NCBI GenBank assembly: GCA_028534125.1
Contig: CM052823.1
Location: forward strand, 39,680,001 to 39,744,000
Length of the DNA stretch: 64,000 nucleotides
Source: Lama glama
Taxonomy: Eukaryota
Reading direction: 5' to 3'
Part shown: positions 1,445 through 44,900 of the stretch, piece after piece
Position numbering within the stretch: position 1 is the first letter of the stretch
How the letters are laid out: each line of letters begins with the position of its first letter
Made by a program: the position numbers and the translations under genes
Notes under the pieces: generated by a model
The model's database searches: none
The model's input: the letters and a program-made list of their open reading frames with translations, nothing else
Told to the model about the DNA's origin: nothing

Positions 1445-1625
1445 AGATTTTCAGAGTGTGGGCTTTGGTGATAGTCCTGAATTCAGGTCCAAGATCTGCC
1501 AATTATTAGTTGTGCAACCTTAAGAGGATGAATTAATCTCTCTAAACCTGTTTTCTCCTCTGTAAAATTGGACATGATCACTGCCCTCACCTTGCAAGTT
1601 GTATTGAAGAACCTTAAGCCCTTGG
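1445..1625 (+). mobile_element. MIR SINE remnant
   Basis: tgggctttgg...ttagttgtgcaacc...ctctaaacctgttttctcctctgtaaaattgg resembles the MIR core. Confidence 0.7.
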
Positions 1626-2063
1626 CACATAACTAACTCTCAGACAAAAAGTAGTCATTATTGTTTAAATATTGGGCAAAAATCTGTAAGCATATGTTAT
1701 CTTGGGTTTTATAAAAGCAGAGGGAGGATAAAATATTCCCACAATTCCCTATTTGTGTTCAGATAACCAGATTTTAGATAAAACACGTGGGATTGAAGAA
1801 TAGATTTCTGATTTGAGGGTCTGGCATTCGATAGACAAATGGCCTTTGAGACCCATTGTCAGGTAAGAGGCAGTTTATATCAAAATTCCAGTATAATCAT
1901 TTTAGTTACCATGTAAGTCTGGTTCTATTTGGTTTCCTGCCAGTGAACACTTTGAATCTGGTCTTCTTGGTCTTTCAGTTTTAAAATAAATTGCTCACCT
2001 TTGTAGGAAAGTGGTAAATGAACTTTTGTTACAATGCACTGTTTTTCTTTAATAGAAGTTTAG

Positions 2064-2262
2064 TTTATTTACAACGTTGTGTTAGTTTCTGTGTAGGTAC
2101 AGCATGGTGATTCAGTTATATTTTTATATTCAGTATTCAGTTATATATTCAAATATATTCTTTTTCACTGTAGGTTGTTACAACATAGTGAGTGTAGTTC
2201 CCTGTGCTATACAGTAGGGCCTTGTTGTTTATCGATTTTATATGAAGTAGTGTGTTTCTGAT
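2064..2262 (-). mobile_element. L1 3'-end fragment (cetartiodactyl type), antisense to NID2
   Basis: tacaacgttgtgttagtttctg...tagttccctgtgctatacagtagg..ttgttgtttat is the reverse complement of the L1 3'UTR seen at 33723-34051. Confidence 0.85.
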
Positions 2263-2283
2263 ACAAATGATCTTTTTATTTAG

Positions 2284-2987
2284 ACACAGCAACCTGGGGA
2301 TTCCTGGAGTGTGGGCTTTTCACATTGGCAGTACCTCCGGGTTGGACAATGTCAGGCCAGCGACAGTTGGAGGAGACCTTTCCAAAACCCACCCATCGGC
2401 TCCCCTGGGACATTCCTTCAGCCATGCTGCAGCCCTGGAAGGTGACTACACTGAGGACAATTTGGATTATTATGATGAGAATGAGGAGGAAGTCGAATAC
2501 CCGCCTGGTGAACCAGAGGAGGCATCAAATGGCCACAGCACAATGGATGTGTCCTTCCACTCGAAAGCTGATTCGAGGCAGTTGGGAGGTGGGATCTCTC
2601 CTCCAGATTCTGACCTGGCCTCCTCTTTGCCACATCCGACATCTAGTGATGGGTATGACACTGAATCTGCCACCTTGGACCCTCAAACCAAAGAGAGGAG
2701 ACCCCATGGGGACATAGATGCCCCAGATTTAAAAGGCCGAGCTGAGTCTTCTGAACAGCCAGTGACCCCTGCTCCACCAGAGACAGGAGATTCACTGGGT
2801 CCTTCCCGGGAAGTCTCCCCTCCCTACCCAGCCGGAGGGGCACTGCCCGCAGAGACGCAAGTTCCTCCAGCCCATCCTGGAAGAGAGGCGGTTCTTCCAA
2901 ATTACCCTGGGCTGGATCACGCTCCGCCACCCGGTCGGGGGAGGCAGGTGGTCGGGGTAGAGGACGACATCAGTTCCAACACTGAGG
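2284..2987 (+). CDS. NID2: NID2 exon, human exons 4+5 as one 704-nt exon (end of G1/NIDO and acidic Pro-rich link region)
   Basis: Acceptor tctttttatttag|A CAC AGC AAC; donor GAG G|gtaagt. Lies in ORF 2252..3001 ([16 protein letters not shown]...DISSNTE). Confidence 0.93.
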
Positions 2988-5900
2988 GTAAGTGGGTTTG
3001 AACACGGGGTGCTAAGAATCCATTTAAAAAATGCTGATTTTGCAGAGAGTTGAGACTATTCTCAAGCGAGTAGATGGAAAGTGTAGCAAAAAGAAGATTG
3101 GGACGGATTTTTAAACCCGCAATTCAGGAGATAGAGCCTTTCCTTGGCCAAAGAAATCTTGGCAGGCAAATTCTGTTCGGAATTTCTTGACCATGAATAA
3201 TGTTTTTTTTGATTTAAAAAAAAAAAACCGGGCCTCACAGAGCACGTGGGGAAGAACTGGGTTGCTCGTGCCAGCTGCGCTCTCAAGTGTAATGAAGAAT
3301 TTCAGCTGGAAAGTTCAGCAAAGGTAAAACGTTCCGGGGCTTCATATGCATCTCGGTGCTGGAGGGCTGCAGGCTGTAGCTGGAAGTGGCGAGTCGTGCT
3401 GGCTCGGAGGAACATTCCAGAGCCTTCCTCTGTGACGGGGCAGCCCTGGCGCTCGCCCGGTCTCCGCTAGAGACGTGGCGGTGGTGTGTGGGAGAGGGGG
3501 CCCCTGGGGAGGGGACACGGACAAGCACCTGTGTCTTGTCGTTTCTGGTTCACGGCTGTGCAGCTGTGGTATTCAGCTCCCCGGAGCCTTGCCCTCATTT
3601 TCATGACTCACTGACCGCAGCGAGAGGCCAGGAGAGAGAAGCCCAGGGGAGGCGGCCGTTAATTAACACGGACACGGAGCCCATGTCACCTTCCCTTCCC
3701 CGCTGAGACTTGCCAGGTCAGCTCTTTCTTCCCAGTCAGGGGTGTACACCTGAATGGGGAACTGACCACAGATTCATCCCATTTGTTCCAGGGCCTGCTC
3801 ATCTGACCTCTGACAGGAGGGAAGAGGTCAGAGGTGAAAGCGTTCTTCAGGACCTTTTTAATTATTTTTTTCACCTTTTCTGTTTCCCATGGCTTTTGTG
3901 GTGAAAACACGTTGACCCAGCAAGGGCCTTGCGGGTGGTTCTGCTGTGGCACCGGCCCGTAAGACTTCGCTGCCTTCAGGAGGGATGAGACTGTGTTGTG
4001 TGATGCCGGGGGGAGAGCACTGGTGTCAGATTTGGGTTTGAATCCTGGCTGTCCCGCTGGCTGGGTGACACTTTCTGTAGCCCAAGCCTCTGATTTCTGC
4101 TAAATTTGTTGAGAGGATTAAAAGAGATAATGAAGTTCTTAGGCTAGTGTCTGTAGAGTTGGATCTTAATAAACGGTGGCTGCAGTTACTAATTACAGAG
4201 GATTTAAAGCAGTGGGAACGGGGCACCAGAAATGAAGAATGGGCTTGTTAAGTAGCAGTGCCTTAATTTGTGCCTAAGGGCCACATTTCTGTCAAGTTGA
4301 AGATGTGAGTTTTATTGGAAGGCTTCAGAACCTTCTGGCAGTCTCCTGAGTTTTCAGCCTAAGTTCCCTATATCTAAGGAAAATTTGAAGCCAAGTCTCA
4401 GACACTTTGATCAAAGAGATTTTTGAAGTAAAGATGTGTCCCTAAGTGGTCTTTTCATTTGTGGGTTGCGATTTCCTGCCTTGGGAAGAGCCTGGAATAT
4501 TAAAAAGCCGATCCCTGGAGCGGTTTATTAAAGAGTTAAGAGGAAGGGGCTGCACACCCTGCTTTGCGCTGTGAGAGGCTGAGATAAGCTGGCTTGGCTG
4601 CAGGAGGTCCAGGGAACCGGCCAGAGTGCAGAACACAGGCGGCAGCTGTAACCCTTGCGGGGCATGAACTACATTTATCAGCTGCTGGTGATGTCTACCC
4701 CTGACATCTTGGGCATGGCAAAATGCATTTGAAACAGCTGGCTAATACAAGGAGCCATCAAAAGAAAAACTAACTAGTTTTCCAACCTTGAAGAAAAAAT
4801 AGCTAGCAGCCACCCTATTAGCAGAGAAGAAAAGCTTTACAACTTGAAAGCAGAGAGGGAAAATAGGAGAGCCTCTGGTTTCACCTCAGGATTTAGGAAG
4901 ACTCAGTGTCCACGGGGCATTTGTTCAGGAACCCTCTGCAGCTGCCAAAATCTGCGGATGCTCAAGCCCCTTAGTCAGCCCTCTGTATCCGTGGTTCTGC
5001 ATTCGTGGGTCCCCCAACCTCGGGTCATTTACATAGTGCAGCAACCACGTTTCCTTGAATCTGGGGATGTAGAACCCGCGGATACTGAGGGCCAGCTGTA
5101 TAGAACCACACAGTGGTAAATTCTTGGTTTTACTTGGCAGTGGTCTTTGTTTTCAAACAACACACTGGCGTCCCAGAGGTCCATCAGGCAAAAGTGGACT
5201 CCCTCCGGGAAAGCTGGTGGGTGGGGTGGCAGAGACTCACACCCCCATCGCCTGCTAATTGCCCAGCCCTGAGCCATCCTGCCCAGCGTTTTCTACCAAT
5301 GGAGTGAAGGAGTGTGGGTTTTGGTGTTTGGTGGTTGTAAGCTTCATTCCCAGGTCTGCTGTGTGGTTTGGGATAAGACATTTGCTCTGTCTGACTATCA
5401 TTTCCTCAGCTATAAGGTGGAAATAATGTAGACCTCATTAAAAAGTTGTGAGAATTAAAATTTGGCATGGAAGCACCATGCCCAATAAAATTTAGTGTCC
5501 CCCTTAAGCCTCATAGTTGTCATCGTGCTAAACCAAGAAATAAAGATTTATAGCTCCCCAAAATACCTCTCCCTTCTCTTTAAAATGCTTTTCCCCTTAG
5601 GGACTCTTTATAGACTTTTTGTTGAGAAATCTAGATTCTTTTTAGAGCATGTCCACACCAGGCAAGAATGTCCCGAGTACACTCTAGTTCTGGCCTCGAG
5701 CATATTACTTGCCCTGTGCTGTTTCCATAGGCCACAGAACCAGCAGTAAATTGGACGCACACACTTTCTCTGCCTCAGGGGTCTTGTTCCTCAAAGCAGC
5801 TCAGGAAGCTTGTTGTCCATGTGTGCCCTTCTCTGACCGGGGCACAAGTGGAAATTTTCACTAGTATTTATCGAGTGCCCTGTTGGACTCTAAGGGTGAG

Positions 5901-11900: not shown

Positions 11901-14900
11901 GAGCAGTGCCTGTGGCCAGGCTCTCCACTACTGCCTGGGCATCCTGCTCATGCCACGCCTACCACAAGAAATTCTGCAGGCACTGAGCATTTCACGACGG
12001 GGTTCCCCACCTCCTTCCCCTCTCTCTCCGCCTGCCTCCCCATACACTTTCTTTAGGGGGTGTGTGTATGTGTGTTCATTCTTTAAGGCCTGCCTTCTCT
12101 TTCAGAAAAAAAAATTTTCTGGGTAGAGACAAGCTATAGGTTGTTCTTTTAAAGTTCAAGGTTACCAAAAAGAAGGAAGGAGTGCTTAGACATAAGACTG
12201 CATTTGGTAGTTTCTTTGTTCTTCCTCTTGGGAGCTCATTACTGTTAGTTTGAACCATATAAAATTGCTTATCTTTGGACATTTTTGACCCAGAAAAAAA
12301 ATGGCAGTTTCATACAGTTCAACCTAACACGTACTTACTGGTTGGCTTTCCTGTCACTGCACTGGGACCAGAGGGGCACAGCCTCATCCTCGCTCACCCA
12401 CCGGCTCTGCAGTGAGACCAGATGGGAGCGGTCAGCAGAACTTCTTGCCAGAAGACAAAGCTAGTTAATTCCCCTGAGTTGAATGTTATCCTGTCTCTTC
12501 AACATCAAAACCCCATTTGTTTATCACAACCTAAACGGATTTTACGGAGCAGATTCTGGGTCCGTGGTGAAGCTTGGCAGCCGCGGTGCTGGAATCACTC
12601 AGTCCTTTTCCTCCAAGTTTGCTTTCCTTTCCAGTCTTCACGTACAATGCTGCCCACAAGGAGACCTGCGAACACAACCACGAGCGCTGCTCCCGGCACG
12701 CCTTCTGCACCGACTACGCCACCGGCTTCTGCTGCCACTGCCAGTCCAGGTTTTACGGGAACGGGAAGCACTGTCTGCCGGAAGGTGAGGGATGCTGGCT
12801 TGACTGGGGCGGGGGCTGCTCGGGGTCTGTCTCTGCCGCCTGCTGTTTCCAGCTGTCGCTATGGGCTCTGCTTATGGACCTTGTGTCTCTACCGCTTGAA
12901 TCAAAGTGCTAGCAACTTGCAGGTGCTCAATAAATGAGAAATAAATGTGTTTGGGTGGATTTCCCAACTTAAGGATTAACCAGAAATGTTTCCGCCCTTT
13001 TTGCTAGCTCATCAGAGTCAAAGTGGGTGGGCGAGAGGGAGGATAGGAGAAGGGCTATGGAAGGCAGGTGTGTGTCCTACCCAGAAGGGTGGTGGGTTGG
13101 TAAGGGTCTCATGAAAAAGGGCTGAAGATGGAGTTTGGGGAGTTGTTGGTGGAATTGTTTTGTCTGTGCACCAAGACGGTGGTCACGGTTGACTGGGTGT
13201 GCTGTGTCTCAGGGGCGCCTCATCGAGTCAATGGGAAAGTGAGTGGGCAACTTCGCGTGGGCCACACGCCCGTGCACTTCACCGACGTGGACCTGCACGC
13301 TTACATCGTGGGCAATGACGGCAGAGCCTACACGGCCATCAGCCACATCCCACAGCCGGCCGCCCAGGCCCTTCTCCCACTCACGCCAATCGGAGGCCTG
13401 TTTGGCTGGCTCTTTGCTTTAGAAAAACCAGGCTGGGAGAACGGCTTCAGCCTCACAGGTGAGTAGGGCCGCCGAGAGGGCCACTGGTCACCCGTGCTTT
13501 GGTGGCGTGGAACCTTGAGTTTTCATTCCATGAAAAAGGATCTGCTTCTCTGATGTTCCAGAGTCACAAGAGTGTAGTATTCTGTCTGGAAGTACCTGGG
13601 GATGGTTTGGCTTCACAGGACTGTTTTTTTAAAAGAATGAATTCTTAATGTTCTCCAAGCTGTTCTGAGAAATAGAATGGTTCCATTTGGAGCATTTGTG
13701 CCCACTGAGCCCAATTTGTTGAAGCTTGTTTCCCAGACTTCATGTCATTGAGTTGCAATGCGCAGATCTGTTAAACAGGGGTGCACGGTGGTAATTCCAG
13801 GACACCTGGGGATGGTGTTACTTCATGGGTGAGGGGTGCCTTTCCTCCCCACCCCCCTCCCCGACAACTCTGACCTGTAATAGTACAGACAGTCCTTCTC
13901 AGACTTCATCCCACACACACATCGCCTGGGGCCTTGGGAGGGTGCAGGTGTGATTCAGTAGGCGGGGTGGGGTGGTGGTGGTCTGTGATCCTGTCTTCTA
14001 GCAAGCTCCCAGGACACAGTGCTCGTCTAAGGACCACCCTTCCATAGCAAGGGGGCAGAGGCTACTTCCTGGCTTCTCATCTCACTGTGCTTTGTTTCCT
14101 AGTGGATTTATCTTCATTGCACAGAAAGTGTAAAAGTTCTTTGTCCACTTCCAGCTGTAGAGCTCAATGGCTGTTAGTAGGATCTTACTTATAAACAGGG
14201 TTTGATAAAACCTTGAGTCAAAAGTAGATAAAATACAGTCTACCCAGTTACATTGACTTTCAGATAAATAAAACATTTTAGTGTAAGCATGTCCCATACA
14301 ATACTTGGGGCATACTTATACCAATTTATTTATTAGTTATCTGAAATTCAAAAGGTGAATGGGTGTCCTGGGGTTTTCTTGGTTTATTTTTGCCAAAGCT
14401 GGAGAAAGGTCAAGGATTTTCCTAGTGGTTTATATTTCACAGGAAACAAGCTCCTACAAAGAGAAGCAGTGTGAGAGGAGGTAGGATGGAACCACACTGC
14501 GTCAGAAGGTTTGGGGAACTAATGGCATCAACAGCTGCTGGCCCTTGGCCTTGGCGATCAGATCTCCTTGGGCACCATCTCCAACAGTAGCAGAAGCTGG
14601 GAAGGGGAAGTGTGCCCTGGTAGTTATTGCTGGAAGAGGCAAGACCTCTTTCCATCTCTGTGCTGGAACTTTTTTTCCTTTCCAGGTGCTACCTTTATCC
14701 ATGACATGGAAGTTACCTTCTACCCAGGGGAGGAGAGGGTTCGAATCACTCAAACTGCCGAGGGACTGGACCCAGAGAACTATCTGAGCATTAAGACCAA
14801 CATTCAAGGCCAGGTGCCCTACATCCCAGCAAATTTCACAGCCCACATCGCTCCCTACAAGGAGCTCTACCACTACTCGGACTCAGGTGCGTGCAGCCAC

Positions 14901-17900
14901 TCCTCTCATCTGCACAGTGGGGATGGCACATGGCTCACAAGACAGGATTGTATGAGTGCGTGGGATGTCCTTCCAACTGTGTGTGGCATATAAAATGAGC
15001 TCAATATTGTTTCTGTTACTCTGATTATTATGTTAGTGTGAGAAAAGTGTTGGCTGCTGTACACAAGAGTATCAGTGTCCCTTCTCAATACTGTTGTTAT
15101 AACATAAAGTAACCTTGTCTGTTGGGATGGGGAGGGATGGTATAATTATAGTTTTTAACCATCCTGCTCTCTGAGCCATGGAAAAATACTGATTATTGGA
15201 ATTTATCCTTTAAAATTTTTTTTAAATTTATGTATATACATGTATATATGGTTTTTTTGTGGGAGAAGGTCATTAGGTCTATTTATTAGTTTTTTTTAAT
15301 GGAGGTACTGGGGATTGAACCCATGACCACATGTATGCTAAGCATGCTGTCTACCACTGAGCTATACCCTCTCCCACTATTGGAATTTCTCCTTGTGTAA
15401 CCTGTTTCAGTATCCTTTGAAATCAGAGATGCTGCACCAGTGTTATAAAACTAATGCTAGTTTTGGAGTCAGAAGACAGAAATTCATATCATGGATGCAT
15501 TTAAAATATGTGGGGAATAAGGTCACTTACATCTGAGGACCTATTTTTCTCATCTCTAGAATGAGAATGTTAATAACCTTATTACTGTCTGTCTACCTTA
15601 CCTGGTTGATATGTGTAAAGTGTGATGTGTTCTTTAAAAACCACCTGATTTCGAGATGCTGCCCTGATCTTAGTCGCTGTCCCGCAGCACAGCTGTTTGA
15701 TTTGTGTCGTGCCTTTGCTTCTCCTGCGGTGTGAGAGCTGGAAGCCGGGCACAGGATGCAGGGAAGAGGATGGGCAGCGGAAAACTGGCCTGGCCTCCTG
15801 ATTCCGCACTCAGATGGAGAGAAAAGACACCCCCACCCCACCAACTACCTTTCTCTGACTTAAGTGCAAGGTGCTGAAAGGCATGCCCTCCGTGCACTGC
15901 AGAGGATGGACTGGTTGGAAACTGGGGATGTAGAGTCAGGCTGACTTGAGCTCTGCCATGTGCCAGCCTTGCGTGTTAGACTTAACTACTTCTTAACCTT
16001 TATAAGGCTCTCCACACAAGTTACGGGCCCACCTCACTGGCTGTGGTGAGGACAGAATAAGGCAGTGCCTACAGAGTGCTCAGCATGGCTACAAGTAGAC
16101 ACATCTATTCTTTGCAAATTCTGGCATCAGTGATTGTACCTGCTCCCTCTCAGTGCCTTGGTTTTACATCCACTCGGGTTCTTGGGATTGCCTTGTAGGT
16201 TTCCCATATAAACTCAGGAACTTCCCAAGGGAACATGCTCCAGGAATTAAATGAAAGCTGTGCAGAGCAACTCACCCCATGTGAAAAACCTCTAATTAAT
16301 ATTTTGTAATTTCCCAGTTTGACCGAATTGTGTCTATTGCAGTTGTGACCTCCACAAGCTCCAGAGACTACTCTCTCACATTTGGTACCATCAACCAAAC
16401 GCAGTCCTACCGTGTTCACCAGAACATCACGTACCAAACATGCAGGCATGCCCCCAGACGCTGGGCCGTCCCCACCACCCAGCAGCTGAACGTGGACCGG
16501 GTCTTTGCCTTGTACACAGATGAAGAAAAAGTGCTCAGATTCGCTGTGACCAATCAGATTGGCCCCGTTGAAGGTATGGTTTCCTTTTTTGTTATTGCTG
16601 GGCAAAAATAACATTGAACTTTCTTTCTTCATCCCTTTTGAGTGGCCTCAGAATGATTCATGTAGGTTACTAAGGTAAACTGAATGCCAGGCTCTATTAG
16701 GTGCTGGGTGTAAGGATGAATAAGGTAGGGTCCTGTCCTTGAGGTGGAGACAGAGGTAGAAATGGAACTTCTAGAACAGTGTTCCTGCCAAGCTCAGGAA
16801 TAAAGCATAATACTTATGCTCAGGAACAGAGCATAATACATGAGACTGGTTTGTAGCAACACCCAACTGTATGTGCCGATCTGCGTCCATGATACACCTG
16901 TGAACAAGCTGGGGCCGAGGTGGGAGGGAGAATGATGCTGACAAATGTTTGTTATAATTGTGGTAAGTGCAGGGTGCTATGAGCCTAGATGGGAGGTTCA
17001 GGAAAGATATCCCTGAGTAAATAATATTTTAGCTAAAACTTAAAGGATGAGAAGGATTTCACCAAATTTTCACCAGTGCCTAGAAGAACAAAAGAAGATA
17101 GAACTGCATGTATGAAAAAACCCAAAGTAACATCACACTTAATGACGGAAGACTGGATGCTTTCCCTCCAAGATCAGGAATAAGACAAGGATGTCATCTC
17201 TTGCAGCTTATCTTCAACATTGTGCTGGAAGTTGTAGGCAGGCAATTAGGCAAAAAAATGAATTACAGGCATCTAGCTTGGAAGGGAAGAGGTAAAATTA
17301 TCTCTCTTTTTCTATGACATGATCTTACTGGTAGAAAGACTAAGAAATTTATTTTAAAAACTATTAGAACTAATAAACAAGTTCAGTAAGGTTGCAGGAT
17401 ATGAAATCAATATATAAAAATCAATCATATTTTAATAGCGATGAGCAAACTGAGAAGAAAATTAAGAAACAATTCCATTTCAAAAAGAATAAAGTAGGAA
17501 TAAATTTTTAAGAAGTGTGATACTTTTACATTAAAACCTATAAATGTTTTTGAAAAAAAGGAAGGCCTAAATAAATGGAAAACTATTCTGTGTTGATGGA
17601 TTGGAAAACTTAATATTAAGATGTCAGTGATTCATAAATTGACCTATGAATTCAATACAATCCTATCAGCTGGTTTTTTTTTTTGAAGAAAACCTGATGC
17701 TAAAATTGATGTGAAAATGTAAGGAACTCAGAATAGCCAAGATAATTTGAAAAAAGAACAAAGTTGGACTAATCATACTTCTGATTTCAAAACTTGAGTA
17801 ATCAATACAGTATGGTCCTTGAATAAGGACAGACATACAGATCAATAGGAATAGAAGTGAGAATACAGAAATAATCACTCATGTTTACGGTCGATTGTTT

Positions 17901-38900: not shown

Positions 38901-41900
38901 CTTGAGGAACTGTAGGTGCTGGAGCCCAAATGGAATCTTTCCAACTGTTCTTTGAAGCCATTGGAAGCTTTGCCCAAAGAAGAGATCTGAAGTGACTTTT
39001 TTTAAGGGGCTCTTTCTGGCTGCCAGTTGAGTCTAGACCAAGAGGCAGGAATGATAATGGAAGCAGGGAAACCAGTGCGAAGGTTCTTGTAGTCATCCTG
39101 GCGCAAAACGACAGGGTGGATGCAGGGAGAAGTGAACGTACGCTGAGTGTATTTTGAAGGCAGAGCTGACAGTTTGGACATATGTGGGGAGTGAGAGAAA
39201 GAAACGAGTCACGGATGACTGGGCCTGAGCAATGGAAAGATGGAGGTGCTGCTTACTGAGATGGAAGAGTCTAGGGGAGAGCAGCTTTGATGGAGGAAAG
39301 CCTGGTTTTTGTTAGAGATCTCTGTTACACATCCAAGTGGCGGTTATAAGCAGGTACTCGGCTCTTTGATGCCACAGACCATAGGCTTTGAGTTGCAGGA
39401 ATTAGTAAAGGAGGAGCCCTATCTATTTCAGCTCCTTTAGGTGATCCTATCTTAGGACAGTGTACAAGTTATTTAACAGCCTGCAGCAGCGTCCTCTGAG
39501 GCAGGACTGCTGTGTGTGGGACAGAACCTTGGCAGTCCTGCGGAAGCAGTCTGGGAGGAAATGCAGGTAGAAAAACTGCTCTGCATGGGAAGCCAACAAG
39601 AGCTTAAGCACAATGGTGAGCTGGGAGGGAGGGGAGGATGGGCTAGGATGCTGGAGAAAGGATGTGGGCAAGGATGCTGGAGAAAGGATGTGGCAGAGCA
39701 ACATGGTGGGAAGCTGGAGAAGGTTCGGCTTTAAGATAGTCACAGAGCAGGGTGGCCAAAGGACCTCTAGGAGCTGGAGTGTCTCTCAGTCAGTATCAAG
39801 GTGTTTGCCACCGTCTCTGCTATGCTCACACATACTAATTATACGAAGATTTACTCAGTATAGTTTTCCAAAGGACGGATACTTAGGGCCACCTAAGTAG
39901 GGCATTCAGTAATACTTTCTAAGACACATGGGCTGGTCTCAAGATAATCCTCTTAGACACAGCTCCCGGAGTCTGAAGCAGGTGGGAAAGAATCAGTATT
40001 GGCTTTAAGCATCATGTAGGCCACTGAGTCCCCAAGGAGAGTCCCCGCAAGCGCTGTCAGCAGAGGCCCCTTCCCTGGCTGAGTGAGCCCTGCGCCCCAG
40101 CTGTTACCTCCTCCTGTTCTTTCCTGCCGTGGCTGGGCCTCGCTGACAGTCTTCTGGCCCGGGGAGACCGGAGCACCAGGAGGGCCCCCTCTCCTGGTTC
40201 CTGTGGTGAACTTCTTAGAGCACTTTGCAGTTCAGGTCCAGCATCCAGGGCCTTGGCTGAGGCCATGCTCATGGACCTTGGGAGGAAGAAGGCCAGGGGA
40301 CCAGGTGTGGGGATCTTGAGCGACATGCTATGTTCTGTCCCTGGCCCACAGTCAAAGGCTTTCTGTCCCTATCTGCTCAGAGCCCACCCAGAGGCCCCGG
40401 ACCATCTGTGAGCGCTGGAGGGAAAGCCTGCTGGAGCACTATGGCGGCACACCCAGGGATGACCAGTACGTGCCCCAGTGTGATGACCTGGGCCACTTCA
40501 CCCCGCTGCAGTGCCATGGGAAGAGTGACTTCTGCTGGTGCGTGGACAAAGACGGCAGAGAGGTGCAGGGCACCCGCTCCCAGCCTGGCACCACCCCCGC
40601 ATGTAAGCACCCGGGGAGAGCCCTCACTCACCTCCGCTGCATCTGAGGTGTTCCTGCGGGCAAGCTGCCAGCCGTCAGGGAAGAGGGGGAAATAAAGGGT
40701 GGCAGGTCCAGTGGAAGAAGTCACTAATACACTATGCTGATTTATAATCTGGTCCACCCACAATCCCAATTTGGACTTAGTGTCTGGTATTTTCATCAGC
40801 AGTTTCTGTAATTGGAACATCTGGGACTCAGCTCAATATGCAGTTCCTCCTCCAACCCCGTGTCCAGGGTGAAAAGGGACACGTGTCACCCTGGGGCCCC
40901 AAAAAGAAGCTGACACAATACTGGCTCTGATTTTTTCCCTTAAAAAAAAAAAGAAAAAAACTTCCTGCTTTGTTCTGAGGGACATGTTTTGTTGTCTTCC
41001 TCCTGGGTAATTGGCAGTGATTTACATAATTGGTCTTGGGAAAAAAACCCCAGAAATTAGAATTTCTTTTAAGGAACATCTGGAGCACATCTGTCCAGGG
41101 TAAAGAACTTTTGATGTTTCTGGAGGCTCTGGTATGTGGGAAAGTTGACTTTTCTCCCCTCTCCCCTCCCACCCTTGTCCCTCCCCTTTCTCACTGCAGG
41201 TATCCCCACGGTCGCTCCCCCCACAGTCCGGCCCACACCCCGGCCTGACGTTGCCCCTCCACCTGTGGGCACCTTCCTGCTCTACGCTCAGGGCCAGCAA
41301 ATTGGCCACTTGCCCCTCAATGGTACCCGGCTTCAGAAGGACACAGCCAAGACCCTGCTGTCACTGCATGTAAAGTGGATTTCTCCGCTGGGGGCCAGGG
41401 TGGCCTGGATTTGGGGAACGGCCTGGGGTGGAGAAGTGGGGGGGGAGTCCTGGAGGGTTTTGGGACTGCAGTCTCTTCGTGAGCCTGACACACAGAGTGG
41501 AGGTGCTCTCTGCTGCCGGGAGTCATGCTTGCCTGACACCACTTTCTCCGATGGGTTCCTGGGTTTCAGATATATGGAAAGGGACTGAGAGTTGTCAGGA
41601 TATTGAGGCAGCACAGAGATTCCAGGGAAAATGATAGGTTAACCCGAGTCCCCAGCCTTCTCTCTGCCATAGACATCCCTGCAGAGATCCTGGAAGTCAG
41701 TTAACACCAGCTTCATTGTGGCAGCCCCTCCCTTCCCCTCCCACGTGGTTCTGTTCACCAGCATCTTTTCTGATCTTCCCTGACTCCTCCATAGATAAAA
41801 ACTGGGGGAGCATGTGATGCTGGGAAAGCAGTGGACAGGGTTTTTCCCAGGGGATGCTGGATGCTTCCTGAGCCAGCAGTCTCCCTACGGTCAAGGCACC

Positions 41901-44900
41901 CCATTCTGGAGGAGGGATTTCTTCTCTAAAATGGAGAAGAGACGGGAGCTCACAAGAAGCACACTGACACTTACAATGGAACATCATCTAATTCCATTTC
42001 TGAACTTCCCACGCTCCAGGTACTTGCTCATCTATGAGAACGAACGTTAGTGTCCATGTTTACATCTACTCCCGTTAACGAACAGCCCCTTATCCAGTTC
42101 CAGAAAAGTTTAGAGGTAGCCAGTGTTCAGAAAAAGATGTGGGGTGTGGGTTTTTCTTCATCCTTTTAAAGATTTAAATTGGGTATGTGTGTTTGCCAAC
42201 ACTAGCGCTGTTTTCTAAGTTTTTCTAAAAGAAAATTGTCATCACCTCAAGCTAACCATCTATTCTAGTCAAGTCAGATGGCTTCACTGCATTTCTGAAC
42301 TTGCCTCTGATGAGGTGGTAGTGGTGGAACTGAAAAAGAAATGGAATATGGGTTATAAGAGTATCTTAGGGAAATTTAAATTGGGACTTCTGCCTCCAAG
42401 AAACCTTGAAATCCCTGGGTTAATGGAAGCCCATGTGGATGTGCACCCTTGCCTGACACAGATGACTTCTAAATTTTCAAGTAAAATTATACTTAACCTT
42501 CAGGTCCTCCCATATAAACTGCCCACTTTTCCACAGGAGCCTAATCCTGCTTGTTTCTTGTACAGACTCCTCTCCCAGAGGCAGTACCAGGAGGCTTTGT
42601 TAGGCAAGCGAGGAGCTGCCATGACCTCAGGGACAGCCAGATGGCCCCTCAATGTTGGCTCGCACATCTGCTGGGCTTCTCAGAATGGGAGTCTGGGTTG
42701 GCAGTTGAATGAAGCAATTTCTGTGCAGAGTTTGAGAGGACTATCACAGACTCAACATTTTAAAAAAGACTTTGCCATTTATTTGGCAATAAGGAAGGAC
42801 AGGAGACCTCCCCGGCCAGGGGTCAGGTGACCACCATTCCTCAGTTCCTTAACCCATCAAACAGCAGACTTTCTTTTAAGAGTACAAAGAATTGCTTTGC
42901 AGTAAGACGCAGAGATGGGGGTAGGGGTGACGGCACCTCAGGTAGCAGAAAGATCTCATAGTCAAAGGAGGGGGGAGGATTTTGTTGTGTTGGCAAATTT
43001 CAGAAAGGCTTTTTCAAAAAGTACTGGTAACATTTGAGAGTCAGTTTTTGCCCAGTGGGATATTAAGAACCTACTTTGCTGAGACTAACATCTGTCCTCT
43101 AATCACTAAAGGGGCTGATATTTCCACAAAATGGCTTTTGTTTTTACCACCAACAAAAAAAGTGCTTACTGAGAGCTTACAGTATACTAATTACTGGTTA
43201 GGATACTTCCTAAGCATTCATGGCATACATTTTTATAGCAGCCACATGAAGTAGATACTGTTACCTTCATGTGGCAATTGAGGAGACAAAGGCATATGGA
43301 GGTTAAGTACCAACGTCACATAGCTAGTAAGTGGCCAAGCCTGGTAATGGCCCCAGGAAATTGGCCTCCATCACCCACACACCTAACCACTGTGCACAGA
43401 TGCCCATAAATCCACACCTTGCAGGGTTGTTTGCTGTAGCCACGCATGAGTGAGGGAGCTGAGTGTGAACTTGGGGGTCATGCAAGCTGTCCTGATTCTT
43501 CTAATTCTGTGTTCTGTCACCAAGGGCTCCATCGTTGTGGGAATTGACTACGACTGCCGGGAGAGGATGGTGTACTGGACGGACGTTGCTGGACGGACAA
43601 TTAGCCGTGCCAGTTTGGAAGCAGGAGCGGAACCCGAGACCATCATTAACTCAGGTCAGCAGCTTCACCCCGAGGACACTTCCTGTTTCATTTCATTCTA
43701 TGAAGTCCAAGTTATTTGCCTGTTTTATGCCAAAGTCTATTTTTATCCAGTGGGGCAGTTCTGTTCAAGTCACTTTACTGAGCTGTACAATCTCTAAACC
43801 TGCACACTCACACGTGAACAGGAAGGCGAGCCTTCTTGATGGGGCTCTCGGTACAAAGGGCTCGCTGTAGGAATTCAGGGTGTGGCCATGGCTGATGCTG
43901 CCTGTCACTCCCCCCCGCCCAGTGCCCTCAGGCTGGTAGTCTGGTTAGACTGGAGGAAACGAGAGCTGGCAGAAAAAGTAATAAAGGATCTGCTCCCCTA
44001 CTGACCTGGTTTCTGCAACTTAAGGACTCGCAGAACTCTTTCTTTCCTTTTCCAACCGTTCAGAGTTGGTCTCTGCTTCTGGCTCACCTTTCACAGCTGC
44101 CAGTGCTCTAGTCCTGCCTTTGTTATATTTCCAGGTCTGATGAGCCCCGAAGGACTTGCCATCGACCACTTCCGTAGAACGATGTACTGGACGGACAGCG
44201 GCCTGGATAAGATAGAGAGGGCCAAGCTGGACGGCTCTGAGCGCAGGGCCCTTTTCCACACGGACCTGGTGAACCCCCGCGCCATCGCTGTGGATCCAAT
44301 CCGAGGGTCGGCTGGGCTTCCCTCATTCTCCTATTACCTGTAGATCCTCATTTGAAGCCCTCGGATTCTAAGTACAGTGTAGGGAGGGTCAGAAGGGGAG
44401 CATACAAGTTCAGATGTGTTAATGACAGTATTTACTGAGGAACTACTAGGTGTCAGGCACCGTTCTGGGCAGACACGGTGTATTCTTTCATGGCGCTTAC
44501 GTTCTACTAGGAGGAAACAAGATAGTAAACCCATGAATATGCAAGGAACTTCATGAAGCCTATGTTGTGATGTGCAGAGAATTCAGAGTATGTGAGGGAC
44601 TGGGGGCTACTCTGGATCAGATGACCAGGCAAGGCCCGAGACAACAGTGAAAGTGGAATTGAGTGCGTCTCTCTCCTTCAGCAGCAGGAAATCCCAGTGT
44701 TAGAATCTCAGTAAGGTTACCCTGCCTTAAACAGTGACTGAGTAACCAAAACTCAGACATCAGGCGTGTCATTTCTCTGGCCTTGTTGTTGCTGTGGCAA
44801 CAGTCCAGAGAACAATGTTTCCTGTTTGGTAACTGCTGAGATCAGCTGGGACATAGAGCTTGGTCAGTGTTTCAGTACTTGTTAGAACCAGGGAGGATGT

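What the first reader, a model, noticed from the sequence alone, without database searches (positions are those of the whole stretch)
2589..2663. 75-nt in-frame coding segment that corresponds to an intron in human NID2 (intronisation/exitron)
The exon encodes ...[36 protein letters not shown], whereas recalled human nidogen-2 reads ...KPLE-ESSTLDP with an exon junction there, exactly 25 aa shorter. The segment starts with a donor-like GAG|GTGGGA at 2589. It ends ACTG|AATCT at 2663, i.e. TG where an acceptor needs AG. One T>A change (Thr codon ACT>ACA, synonymous) would create a frame-preserving 75-nt intron. This looks like the pre-intron state of an intron gained from coding sequence, with the latent donor already present. 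Human structure is from memory; the motifs are seen.
Basis: partly seen in the sequence, partly recalled or inferred. Interest (0 to 1): 0.7.

Follow-up and report, generated by a model that had tools for sequence, protein, structure and literature searches.

The report
Camelid NID2 exitron orthologue, acceptor lost
A 75-base stretch inside a large coding exon of the basement-membrane gene NID2 matches a tiny intron that humans splice out. In this animal its 3' splice signal was lost secondarily, so it is most likely plain coding sequence: a modest example of an in-exon intron decaying, not one being born.

Summary
Window 2589-2663 lies in the NID2 linker exon (2284-2987, + strand). It starts GAG|GTGGGA, ends ACTG|AATCT, is 75 nt long and keeps the frame.

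It is orthologous to a real exonic intron (exitron). The human reference NID2 (1375 aa) reads KPLE|ESSTLDP. The predicted human isoform X1 (1402 aa) carries 27 extra residues at exactly that point. Macaque, green monkey and donkey also have paired isoforms. The aye-aye and manatee genomes hold the segment as an open-frame GT..AG unit of 84 nt.

The "pre-intron" reading is not supported:
- All seven other placental mammals with DNA in hand have AG at the acceptor, including dolphin and sheep. The window's TG is therefore derived (ACA to ACT, next to GAA to GAC).
- Dolphin, sheep and the window share a 9-nt deletion that removed the pyrimidine tract, so the 3' site was probably already weak.
- A turtle has GA there, so the segment was coding first.
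- Mouse lacks the donor instead.

Camelid RNA could not be inspected, because exon contigs were filtered out. The donor remains credible and could pair with other acceptors.

Verdict: an ordinary coding segment, the decayed orthologue of a known kind of element. Interest is low to moderate.

The parts
2284..2987 (+). NID2 linker exon (704 nt) between the NIDO/G1 and G2F domains; no Pfam domain
   Evidence: Acceptor and donor read. tblastn to dolphin NID2 residues 258-497. Junction 2987|12635 reconstructed and seen in one RNA contig of run X9, whose loose end after 2987 reads as the next exon. Pfam found 0 families.
2589..2663 (+). 75-nt in-frame segment (25 codons, rich in Ser, Thr and Pro); orthologue of the human and primate NID2 exitron
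2586..2594 (+). Conserved donor-like site GAG|GTGGGA (cut after 2588)
   Evidence: A rough position-weight score of 7.3, against a mean of 8.6 (sd 2.6, min 2.1) for 15 real NID2 donors in the window. GGT is present in 7 of 8 mammals; mouse has GTC. Seal isoform X3 and a beaver model join this same site to the next exon.
2641..2666 (+). Disabled acceptor region ...GGGTATGACACTG|AAT; pyrimidine fraction 0.35 at positions -20 to -4
   Evidence: real acceptors in the window average 0.76, with a minimum of 0.59. Orthologues outside cetartiodactyls score 0.47-0.71 and end in AG.
2662..2662 (+). T where all 7 other placentals have A (ACA or AGA to ACT, synonymous Thr); destroys the AG
2659..2659 (+). 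C where the other 7 have A (GAA or CAA to GAC, Glu to Asp); a second window-specific change, 4 nt before the former cut
   Evidence: only 5 window-specific changes fall on the 59 third positions that are invariant in the others, and two of them are these neighbouring ones.
2653..2654 (+). Site of a 9-nt deletion shared with dolphin and sheep; it removed the pyrimidine-rich CCATTCYAY tract before the acceptor
   Evidence: Alignments. Unit lengths are 75 nt in the three cetartiodactyls and 81-87 nt elsewhere.
2692..2693 (+). Nearest in-frame downstream AG (a 105-nt unit counted from 2589); a hypothetical alternative acceptor
   Evidence: No RNA evidence.
12635..12784 (+). Next exon. Its acceptor is in frame with the donor at 2589 (would remove 399 nt, 133 codons)
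   Evidence: Analogous joins appear in models P0098 and P0096.

Best explanation
Window 2589-2663 is ordinary, constitutively coding sequence of the disordered NID2 link region. It is the orthologue of an exitron, a short open-frame intron inside a coding exon, that is removed from the human reference mRNA. The segment was coding first (turtle). Placental mammals carry a GT...AG frame around it of 75 to 87 nt, always a multiple of three. Individual lineages have since disabled it: mouse lost the donor GT, and this animal lost the acceptor AG through a synonymous ACA to ACT change. In the common ancestor of camelids, ruminants and whales a 9-nt deletion had already removed the pyrimidine tract, so the 3' site was probably weak or dead before the AG went. 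On that view the AG loss was most likely neutral. Shown here: the orthology, the polarity of the change, the splice-signal anatomy, and splicing versus retention in primate and donkey isoform sets. Inferred: that the segment is always retained in camelid mRNA, and that the 3' site was already non-functional in the cetartiodactyl ancestor.
For: Human reference versus isoform X1, macaque X1 versus X3, green monkey X1 versus X3, and donkey X1 versus X2 all differ by exactly this segment. A human-like unspliced ORF (P0129) carries the segment, while 3-6 kb transcript contigs (P0021, P0022) lack it. The aye-aye and manatee genomes hold it as an 84-nt open-frame GT..AG unit that their gene models remove. 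AG is present in 7 of 7 other placentals and TG only in the window. The turtle has GA at that position. Mouse lacks the GT, and 187 mouse contigs of 2-5 kb, transcript-sized, encode exactly the retained 1403-aa form. Every cetartiodactyl model retains the segment: 7 whale, 8 pig, cow and sheep. The acceptor pyrimidine fraction is 0.29-0.35 in cetartiodactyls, 0.47-0.71 elsewhere, and at least 0.59 for real acceptors in the window. Run X33 (89 M letters, probably RNA-seq) holds all 12 sampled 31-mers across 2560-2693, that is the retained form with both boundaries.
Against: No camelid RNA could be laid on the exon, because contigs over 2256-2987 were silently filtered. Retention in mRNA is therefore inferred from the missing AG plus one run of unproven type. 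Outside primates and the donkey, the spliced form is known only from gene models that may have been guided by the human protein. It is therefore not shown that the AG was ever used in the ancestors of this lineage. Third-codon bases are invariant across the 7 other mammals in 27% of columns, so AG conservation alone does not prove selection for splicing. RNA runs of a related organism (B) hold only 0.17 of the words around the segment, against 0.67 exon-wide. This is unexplained.
Confidence: 0.72

Rival explanations
1. The donor at 2589 is still used in this animal, paired with another acceptor. The candidates are the in-frame AAG ending at 2693 (105 nt) and the acceptor of the next exon at 12635 (removing 133 codons, most of the linker). 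Either would make the site a live alternative 5' splice site rather than a relic.
For: The donor scores within the range of real NID2 donors and is conserved in 7 of 8 mammals. Grey seal isoform X3 (P0098) and a beaver model (P0096) read ...LG|VFTYNAA, that is this donor joined to the next exon. Both joins are in frame in the window.
Against: No camelid junction was seen, because the data were filtered. The seal and beaver models were not verified with reads. The AAG at 2693 has a purine-rich run just upstream.
Confidence: 0.15
2. One reading: the camelid shows the ancestral pre-intron state, with a latent donor in place and an acceptor one substitution away, and other lineages later completed the intron.
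For: The segment was coding before it became spliceable (turtle GA). A single T to A change at 2662 would restore an AG.
Against: AG is present in Afrotheria, Euarchontoglires, bats, carnivores, ruminants and whales. The reading would therefore need several independent gains of the same A, against one loss on the camelid branch.
Confidence: 0.04
3. There is no splicing story at all: the difference from the human protein is an ordinary genomic insertion or deletion in a fast-evolving disordered linker.
For: The linker is indel-rich. There are many gaps in the codon alignment, and the segment evolves at the same rate as the rest of the linker.
Against: Human isoform X1 and gorilla X1 contain the segment while the human reference does not. 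The same pairing occurs within macaque, green monkey and donkey. The aye-aye and manatee genomes contain it although their models omit it.
Confidence: 0.02

Closest known systems
Exitrons (exonic introns; Marquez et al. 2015, PMC4484396)
   Same: The segment is internal to a protein-coding exon, has no stop codon, has a length that is a multiple of three, and encodes a disordered Ser/Thr/Pro-rich stretch. Its splicing gives an internally deleted protein, and its origin is ancestral coding sequence.
   Different: The copy in the window lacks the AG acceptor and its pyrimidine tract, so it cannot be spliced at the orthologous boundaries. It is the decayed orthologue, not an exitron itself.
Human NID2 reference versus isoform X1 (NP_031387.3, 1375 aa; XP_005267462.1, 1402 aa)
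   Same: Same position and same flanking peptides (…PL[EG] | ES[AS]TLDP…). The internal peptide is homologous ([13 protein letters not shown]…).
   Different: The human unit is 27 codons and the window's is 25. The human reference mRNA removes it, while the window cannot remove it at the same acceptor.
Intronization of coding sequence (Irimia et al. 2008; Catania and Lynch 2008, as discussed in PMC4484396)
   Same: The placental GT..AG unit arose inside older coding sequence. Turtle GTG AAA corresponds to placental ACA GAA, the change that creates the AG.
   Different: The window documents the reverse step, loss of a splice signal after intronization. It is not an intermediate on the way in.

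Membership tests
Exitron | Lies wholly inside an annotated or constitutive protein-coding exon | tested here: met
   Exon 2284-2987 is bounded by a canonical acceptor and donor, and the donor at 2987 was seen spliced in an RNA contig.
Exitron | Open reading frame throughout; length a multiple of three for the protein-preserving subclass | tested here: met
   75 nt and no stop codon. The same holds in 7 orthologues of 75-87 nt.
Exitron | Canonical splice boundaries (GT...AG) at its ends | tested here: not met
   The window has GT...TG, with a pyrimidine fraction of 0.35 before the cut. Six of the 7 orthologues have GT...AG; mouse has TC...AG.
Exitron | Both spliced and retained mRNA forms are observed | tested here: inconclusive
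   Met in human, macaque, green monkey and donkey isoform sets. In this animal's lineage the contigs over the exon were filtered out, and only indirect word evidence for the retained form exists.
Proto-intron / pre-intronization state | The non-spliceable state is ancestral relative to lineages that have the intron | tested here: not met
   AG is present in all 7 other placentals, including two cetartiodactyls. TG is unique to the window.
NID2 (nidogen-2) orthologue | Exon series collinear with NID2 proteins, with reciprocal similarity of the linker exon | tested here: met
   17 collinear exon matches to dolphin NID2 residues 258-1394. The named hits in the full-length searches are all nidogen-2.

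The most novel reading that the evidence does not exclude
NID2 carries an exitron born in the mammalian stem by creation of an AG inside older coding sequence. It has since been disabled independently at opposite ends, the donor in mouse and the acceptor in camelids. The surviving camelid donor still works as an alternative 5' splice site to the next exon, giving a nidogen-2 isoform that lacks most of the link region, as seal and beaver models suggest. This would be a traceable birth, death and re-use series for one exitron.
Probability: 0.15. Interest if true: 0.45.

Novelty: new member of a known kind. Interest (0 to 1): 0.3.

Why it matters
It gives a clean, datable example of how an in-exon intron evolves. 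The sequence was coding in reptiles and is framed by GT..AG in placentals. It is spliced in the human reference transcript and then disabled by different single changes in different lineages. It also explains why human NID2 (1375 aa) is about 27 residues shorter than mouse NID2 (1403 aa) and most other mammalian NID2 proteins. For genome annotation it warns that projecting the human gene model onto camelids would force a non-canonical intron here. No papers holding both 'exitron' and 'NID2' were found. The biological stakes are modest, because the segment is a small part of a disordered, fast-evolving linker.

Tried and rejected
- **Reads on the exon.** Read laying on 1500-4000 with four runs showed no contigs at all across 2256-2987, although the index says these runs hold 67-91% of the exon's words. 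The tool's description says contigs that match human DNA are left out without notice, which is the likely cause, so nothing can be concluded about splicing.
- **Camelid proteins.** None appeared in any of the three protein searches or the representative search, so camelid isoform models could not be compared.
- **DNA look-ups that failed.** The elephant file was too large. Two marsupial proteins were not on record.
- **Metagenome scan.** A scan for camelid host contigs with a degenerate acceptor pattern found nothing.
- **Literature.** The mouse Nid2 gene-structure paper (PMC135501) is not held. The exitron paper has no supplements held, so its human list could not be checked for NID2.
- **Pfam.** No family was found on the exon.
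- **Selection on the splice dinucleotides.** I dropped this as an argument, because 27% of third-codon positions are equally invariant.
- **Plain indel.** I considered and rejected this explanation.

Full report
**1. What is in the window**

The finding lies in a 704-nt exon on the + strand.
- The exon starts at 2284, after the acceptor ttatttag. It ends at 2987, before gtaagt.
- Its frame is open. It has no Pfam domain.
- It aligns to residues 258-497 of dolphin nidogen-2. Sixteen further collinear NID2 exon matches lie downstream in the window.
- One contig of run X9 ends at 2987 and continues with letters that read as the start of the next exon. The donor at 2987 is therefore used in RNA.
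- Within the exon, GT sits at 2589-2590 in the context GAG|GTGGGA. ACTG ends at 2663 and is followed by AATCT.
- The piece is 75 nt, starts at codon phase 1 and has no stop codon.

**2. Is the human comparison real?**

- The human reference NID2 (NP_031387.3 / Q14112, 1375 aa) reads TKPLE|ESSTLDP.
- The predicted human isoform X1 (XP_005267462.1, 1402 aa) has 27 extra residues at exactly that point. Gorilla X1 has the same.
- The same with/without pairing occurs within rhesus macaque (X1 1404 aa, X3 1377 aa), green monkey (X1, X3) and donkey (X1 1389 aa, X2 1361 aa).
- A human-like unspliced ORF that reads through both exon borders (P0129) carries the segment. Transcript-sized contigs (P0021, P0022; 3-6 kb) lack it.
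- Models of aye-aye, tarsier, colugo, aardvark, manatee, golden mole, greater mouse-eared bat (Myotis myotis) and a pipistrelle also lack exactly this piece. Their relatives carry it: mouse lemur, elephant and Daubenton's bat (Myotis daubentonii).
- The aye-aye and manatee genomes contain the piece as an open-frame GT...AG unit of 84 nt.

The difference from human is therefore made by splicing, not by a genomic deletion. The element fits the published definition of an exitron (PMC4484396):
- it is internal to a coding exon;
- it has no stop codon;
- its length is a multiple of three;
- it encodes a disordered stretch.

**3. Polarity of the camelid state**

I fetched the orthologous exon from eight genomes and aligned it by codon.

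| Species | Donor position | Acceptor position | Unit length |
|---|---|---|---|
| Window | G\|GT | ACTG\|A (no AG) | 75 nt |
| Dolphin | G\|GT | ACAG\|A | 75 nt |
| Sheep | G\|GT | ACAG\|A | 75 nt |
| Golden jackal | G\|GT | ACAG\|A | 87 nt |
| Daubenton's bat | G\|GT | ACAG\|A | 81 nt |
| Aye-aye | G\|GT | AGAG\|A | 84 nt |
| Manatee | G\|GT | ACAG\|A | 84 nt |
| Mouse | GAC GTC, no GT in register | ACAG\|A | 84 nt |
| Turtle | homology uncertain | GTGA\|A (no AG) | not scored |

- Camelids are the basal branch of cetartiodactyls, and both other cetartiodactyls and all outgroups have AG. The TG is therefore a derived loss: ACA to ACT, which is synonymous.
- The neighbouring codon also changed only in the window (GAA to GAC).
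- Only five window-specific changes fall on the 59 third-codon positions that are invariant in the other seven mammals. Two of the five are these adjacent ones.
- The turtle alignment is gap-free in the acceptor part. The AG arose later, inside coding sequence.
- A GGT glycine codon exists near the donor position in the turtle, but its homology is uncertain because of a two-codon gap.

**4. State of the splice signals**

- A rough donor matrix gives 7.3 for GAG|GTGGGA. The 15 real NID2 donors in the window average 8.6 (sd 2.6, minimum 2.1). The donor is credible.
- The acceptor is not. Even setting aside the missing AG, the pyrimidine fraction at -20 to -4 is 0.35. Real acceptors in the window average 0.76, with a minimum of 0.59.
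- Dolphin (0.29) and sheep (0.35) are equally poor. Manatee, aye-aye, bat, jackal and mouse score 0.47-0.71.
- The cause is a 9-nt deletion shared by the window, dolphin and sheep. It removed the CCATTCYAY tract.
- In agreement, every cetartiodactyl protein model retains the segment: seven whale, eight pig, cow and sheep.
- I infer that the 3' site was already weak or dead in the cetartiodactyl ancestor, and that the later AG loss was neutral.

**5. What the evidence does not show**

- Third-codon bases are invariant in 27% of columns. Conservation of the AG and the GT is not statistical proof of selection for splicing.
- The segment evolves at the same rate as the rest of the linker.
- Outside primates and the donkey, the spliced form is known only from gene models that may have been guided by the human protein.
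- Mouse supports the signal logic. It lacks the donor, and 187 contigs of 2-5 kb, transcript-sized, encode exactly the retained 1403-aa protein.

**6. Camelid RNA**

The tool's description says human-like contigs are left out without notice. This is therefore no finding.
- A second index search on 2560-2693 showed all 12 sampled words in genome-sized runs of five organism labels. It showed the same in X33, an 89-million-letter run from the same study as X15-X18. X33 is probably RNA-seq, but that is unproven. This fits retention of the segment.
- RNA runs of organism B hold only 0.17 of these words, against 0.67 exon-wide. That relative either differs in sequence here or processes the region differently. 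I could not resolve this.

**7. The surviving donor**

- Grey seal isoform X3 and a beaver model read ...LG|VFTYNAA. That is this donor joined to the next exon.
- In the window the same join (2588|12635) is in frame and would remove 133 codons.
- Either is possible and neither has RNA support here.

**8. Verdict**

The window holds the decayed orthologue of a mammalian NID2 exitron, and it most likely functions simply as coding sequence. No paper holding both 'exitron' and 'NID2' was found, so the case appears undescribed. It belongs to a known kind of element, and its consequences are small.

Noticed in passing
window 2172-2255: This is a very high-copy repeat just upstream of the exon's acceptor. 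Summed contig depth reaches about 76,000 in X9, and hundreds of contigs break at 2195 and at 2226-2243. It looks like the tail of an interspersed repeat; the family was not identified.
   Followed up: no
window 2560-2693, in runs of organism B: RNA-on-record runs of a related organism hold only 2 of the 12 sampled words here, against 0.67 of words over the whole exon. The relative has either clustered substitutions or an indel at the segment, or processes it differently.
   Followed up: partly
window 2588 joined to 12635 (hypothetical): Grey seal isoform X3 (P0098) and a beaver model (P0096) join the orthologous internal donor to the next exon, deleting most of the link region. Bear models (P0092, P0099) use yet other internal donors in this exon. 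The linker exon seems prone to alternative 5' splice sites.
   Followed up: partly
L005 (mouse) about 17300-17310; rat-like P0076: Mouse has GAC GTC where other mammals have GGA GGT, so it lacks the exitron donor. A rat-like transcript protein has a deletion spanning the donor region. Rodents therefore appear to have fixed the retained form by a different route from camelids.
   Followed up: partly
L003 (sheep) exon, about 27 nt upstream of the donor; cow P0079: Ruminants share a 9-codon deletion (…DVS[FL]-…-GGRIS) that ends right at the donor-side Gly codons, and their intron start reads GTAGGA.
   Followed up: no
window 41196-43656: My simple junction finder failed between the exon matches at 41196-41492 and 43450-43656 (score 9). 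The overlapping protein coordinates suggest repeated LDL-receptor class B units or a missed small exon there.
   Followed up: no
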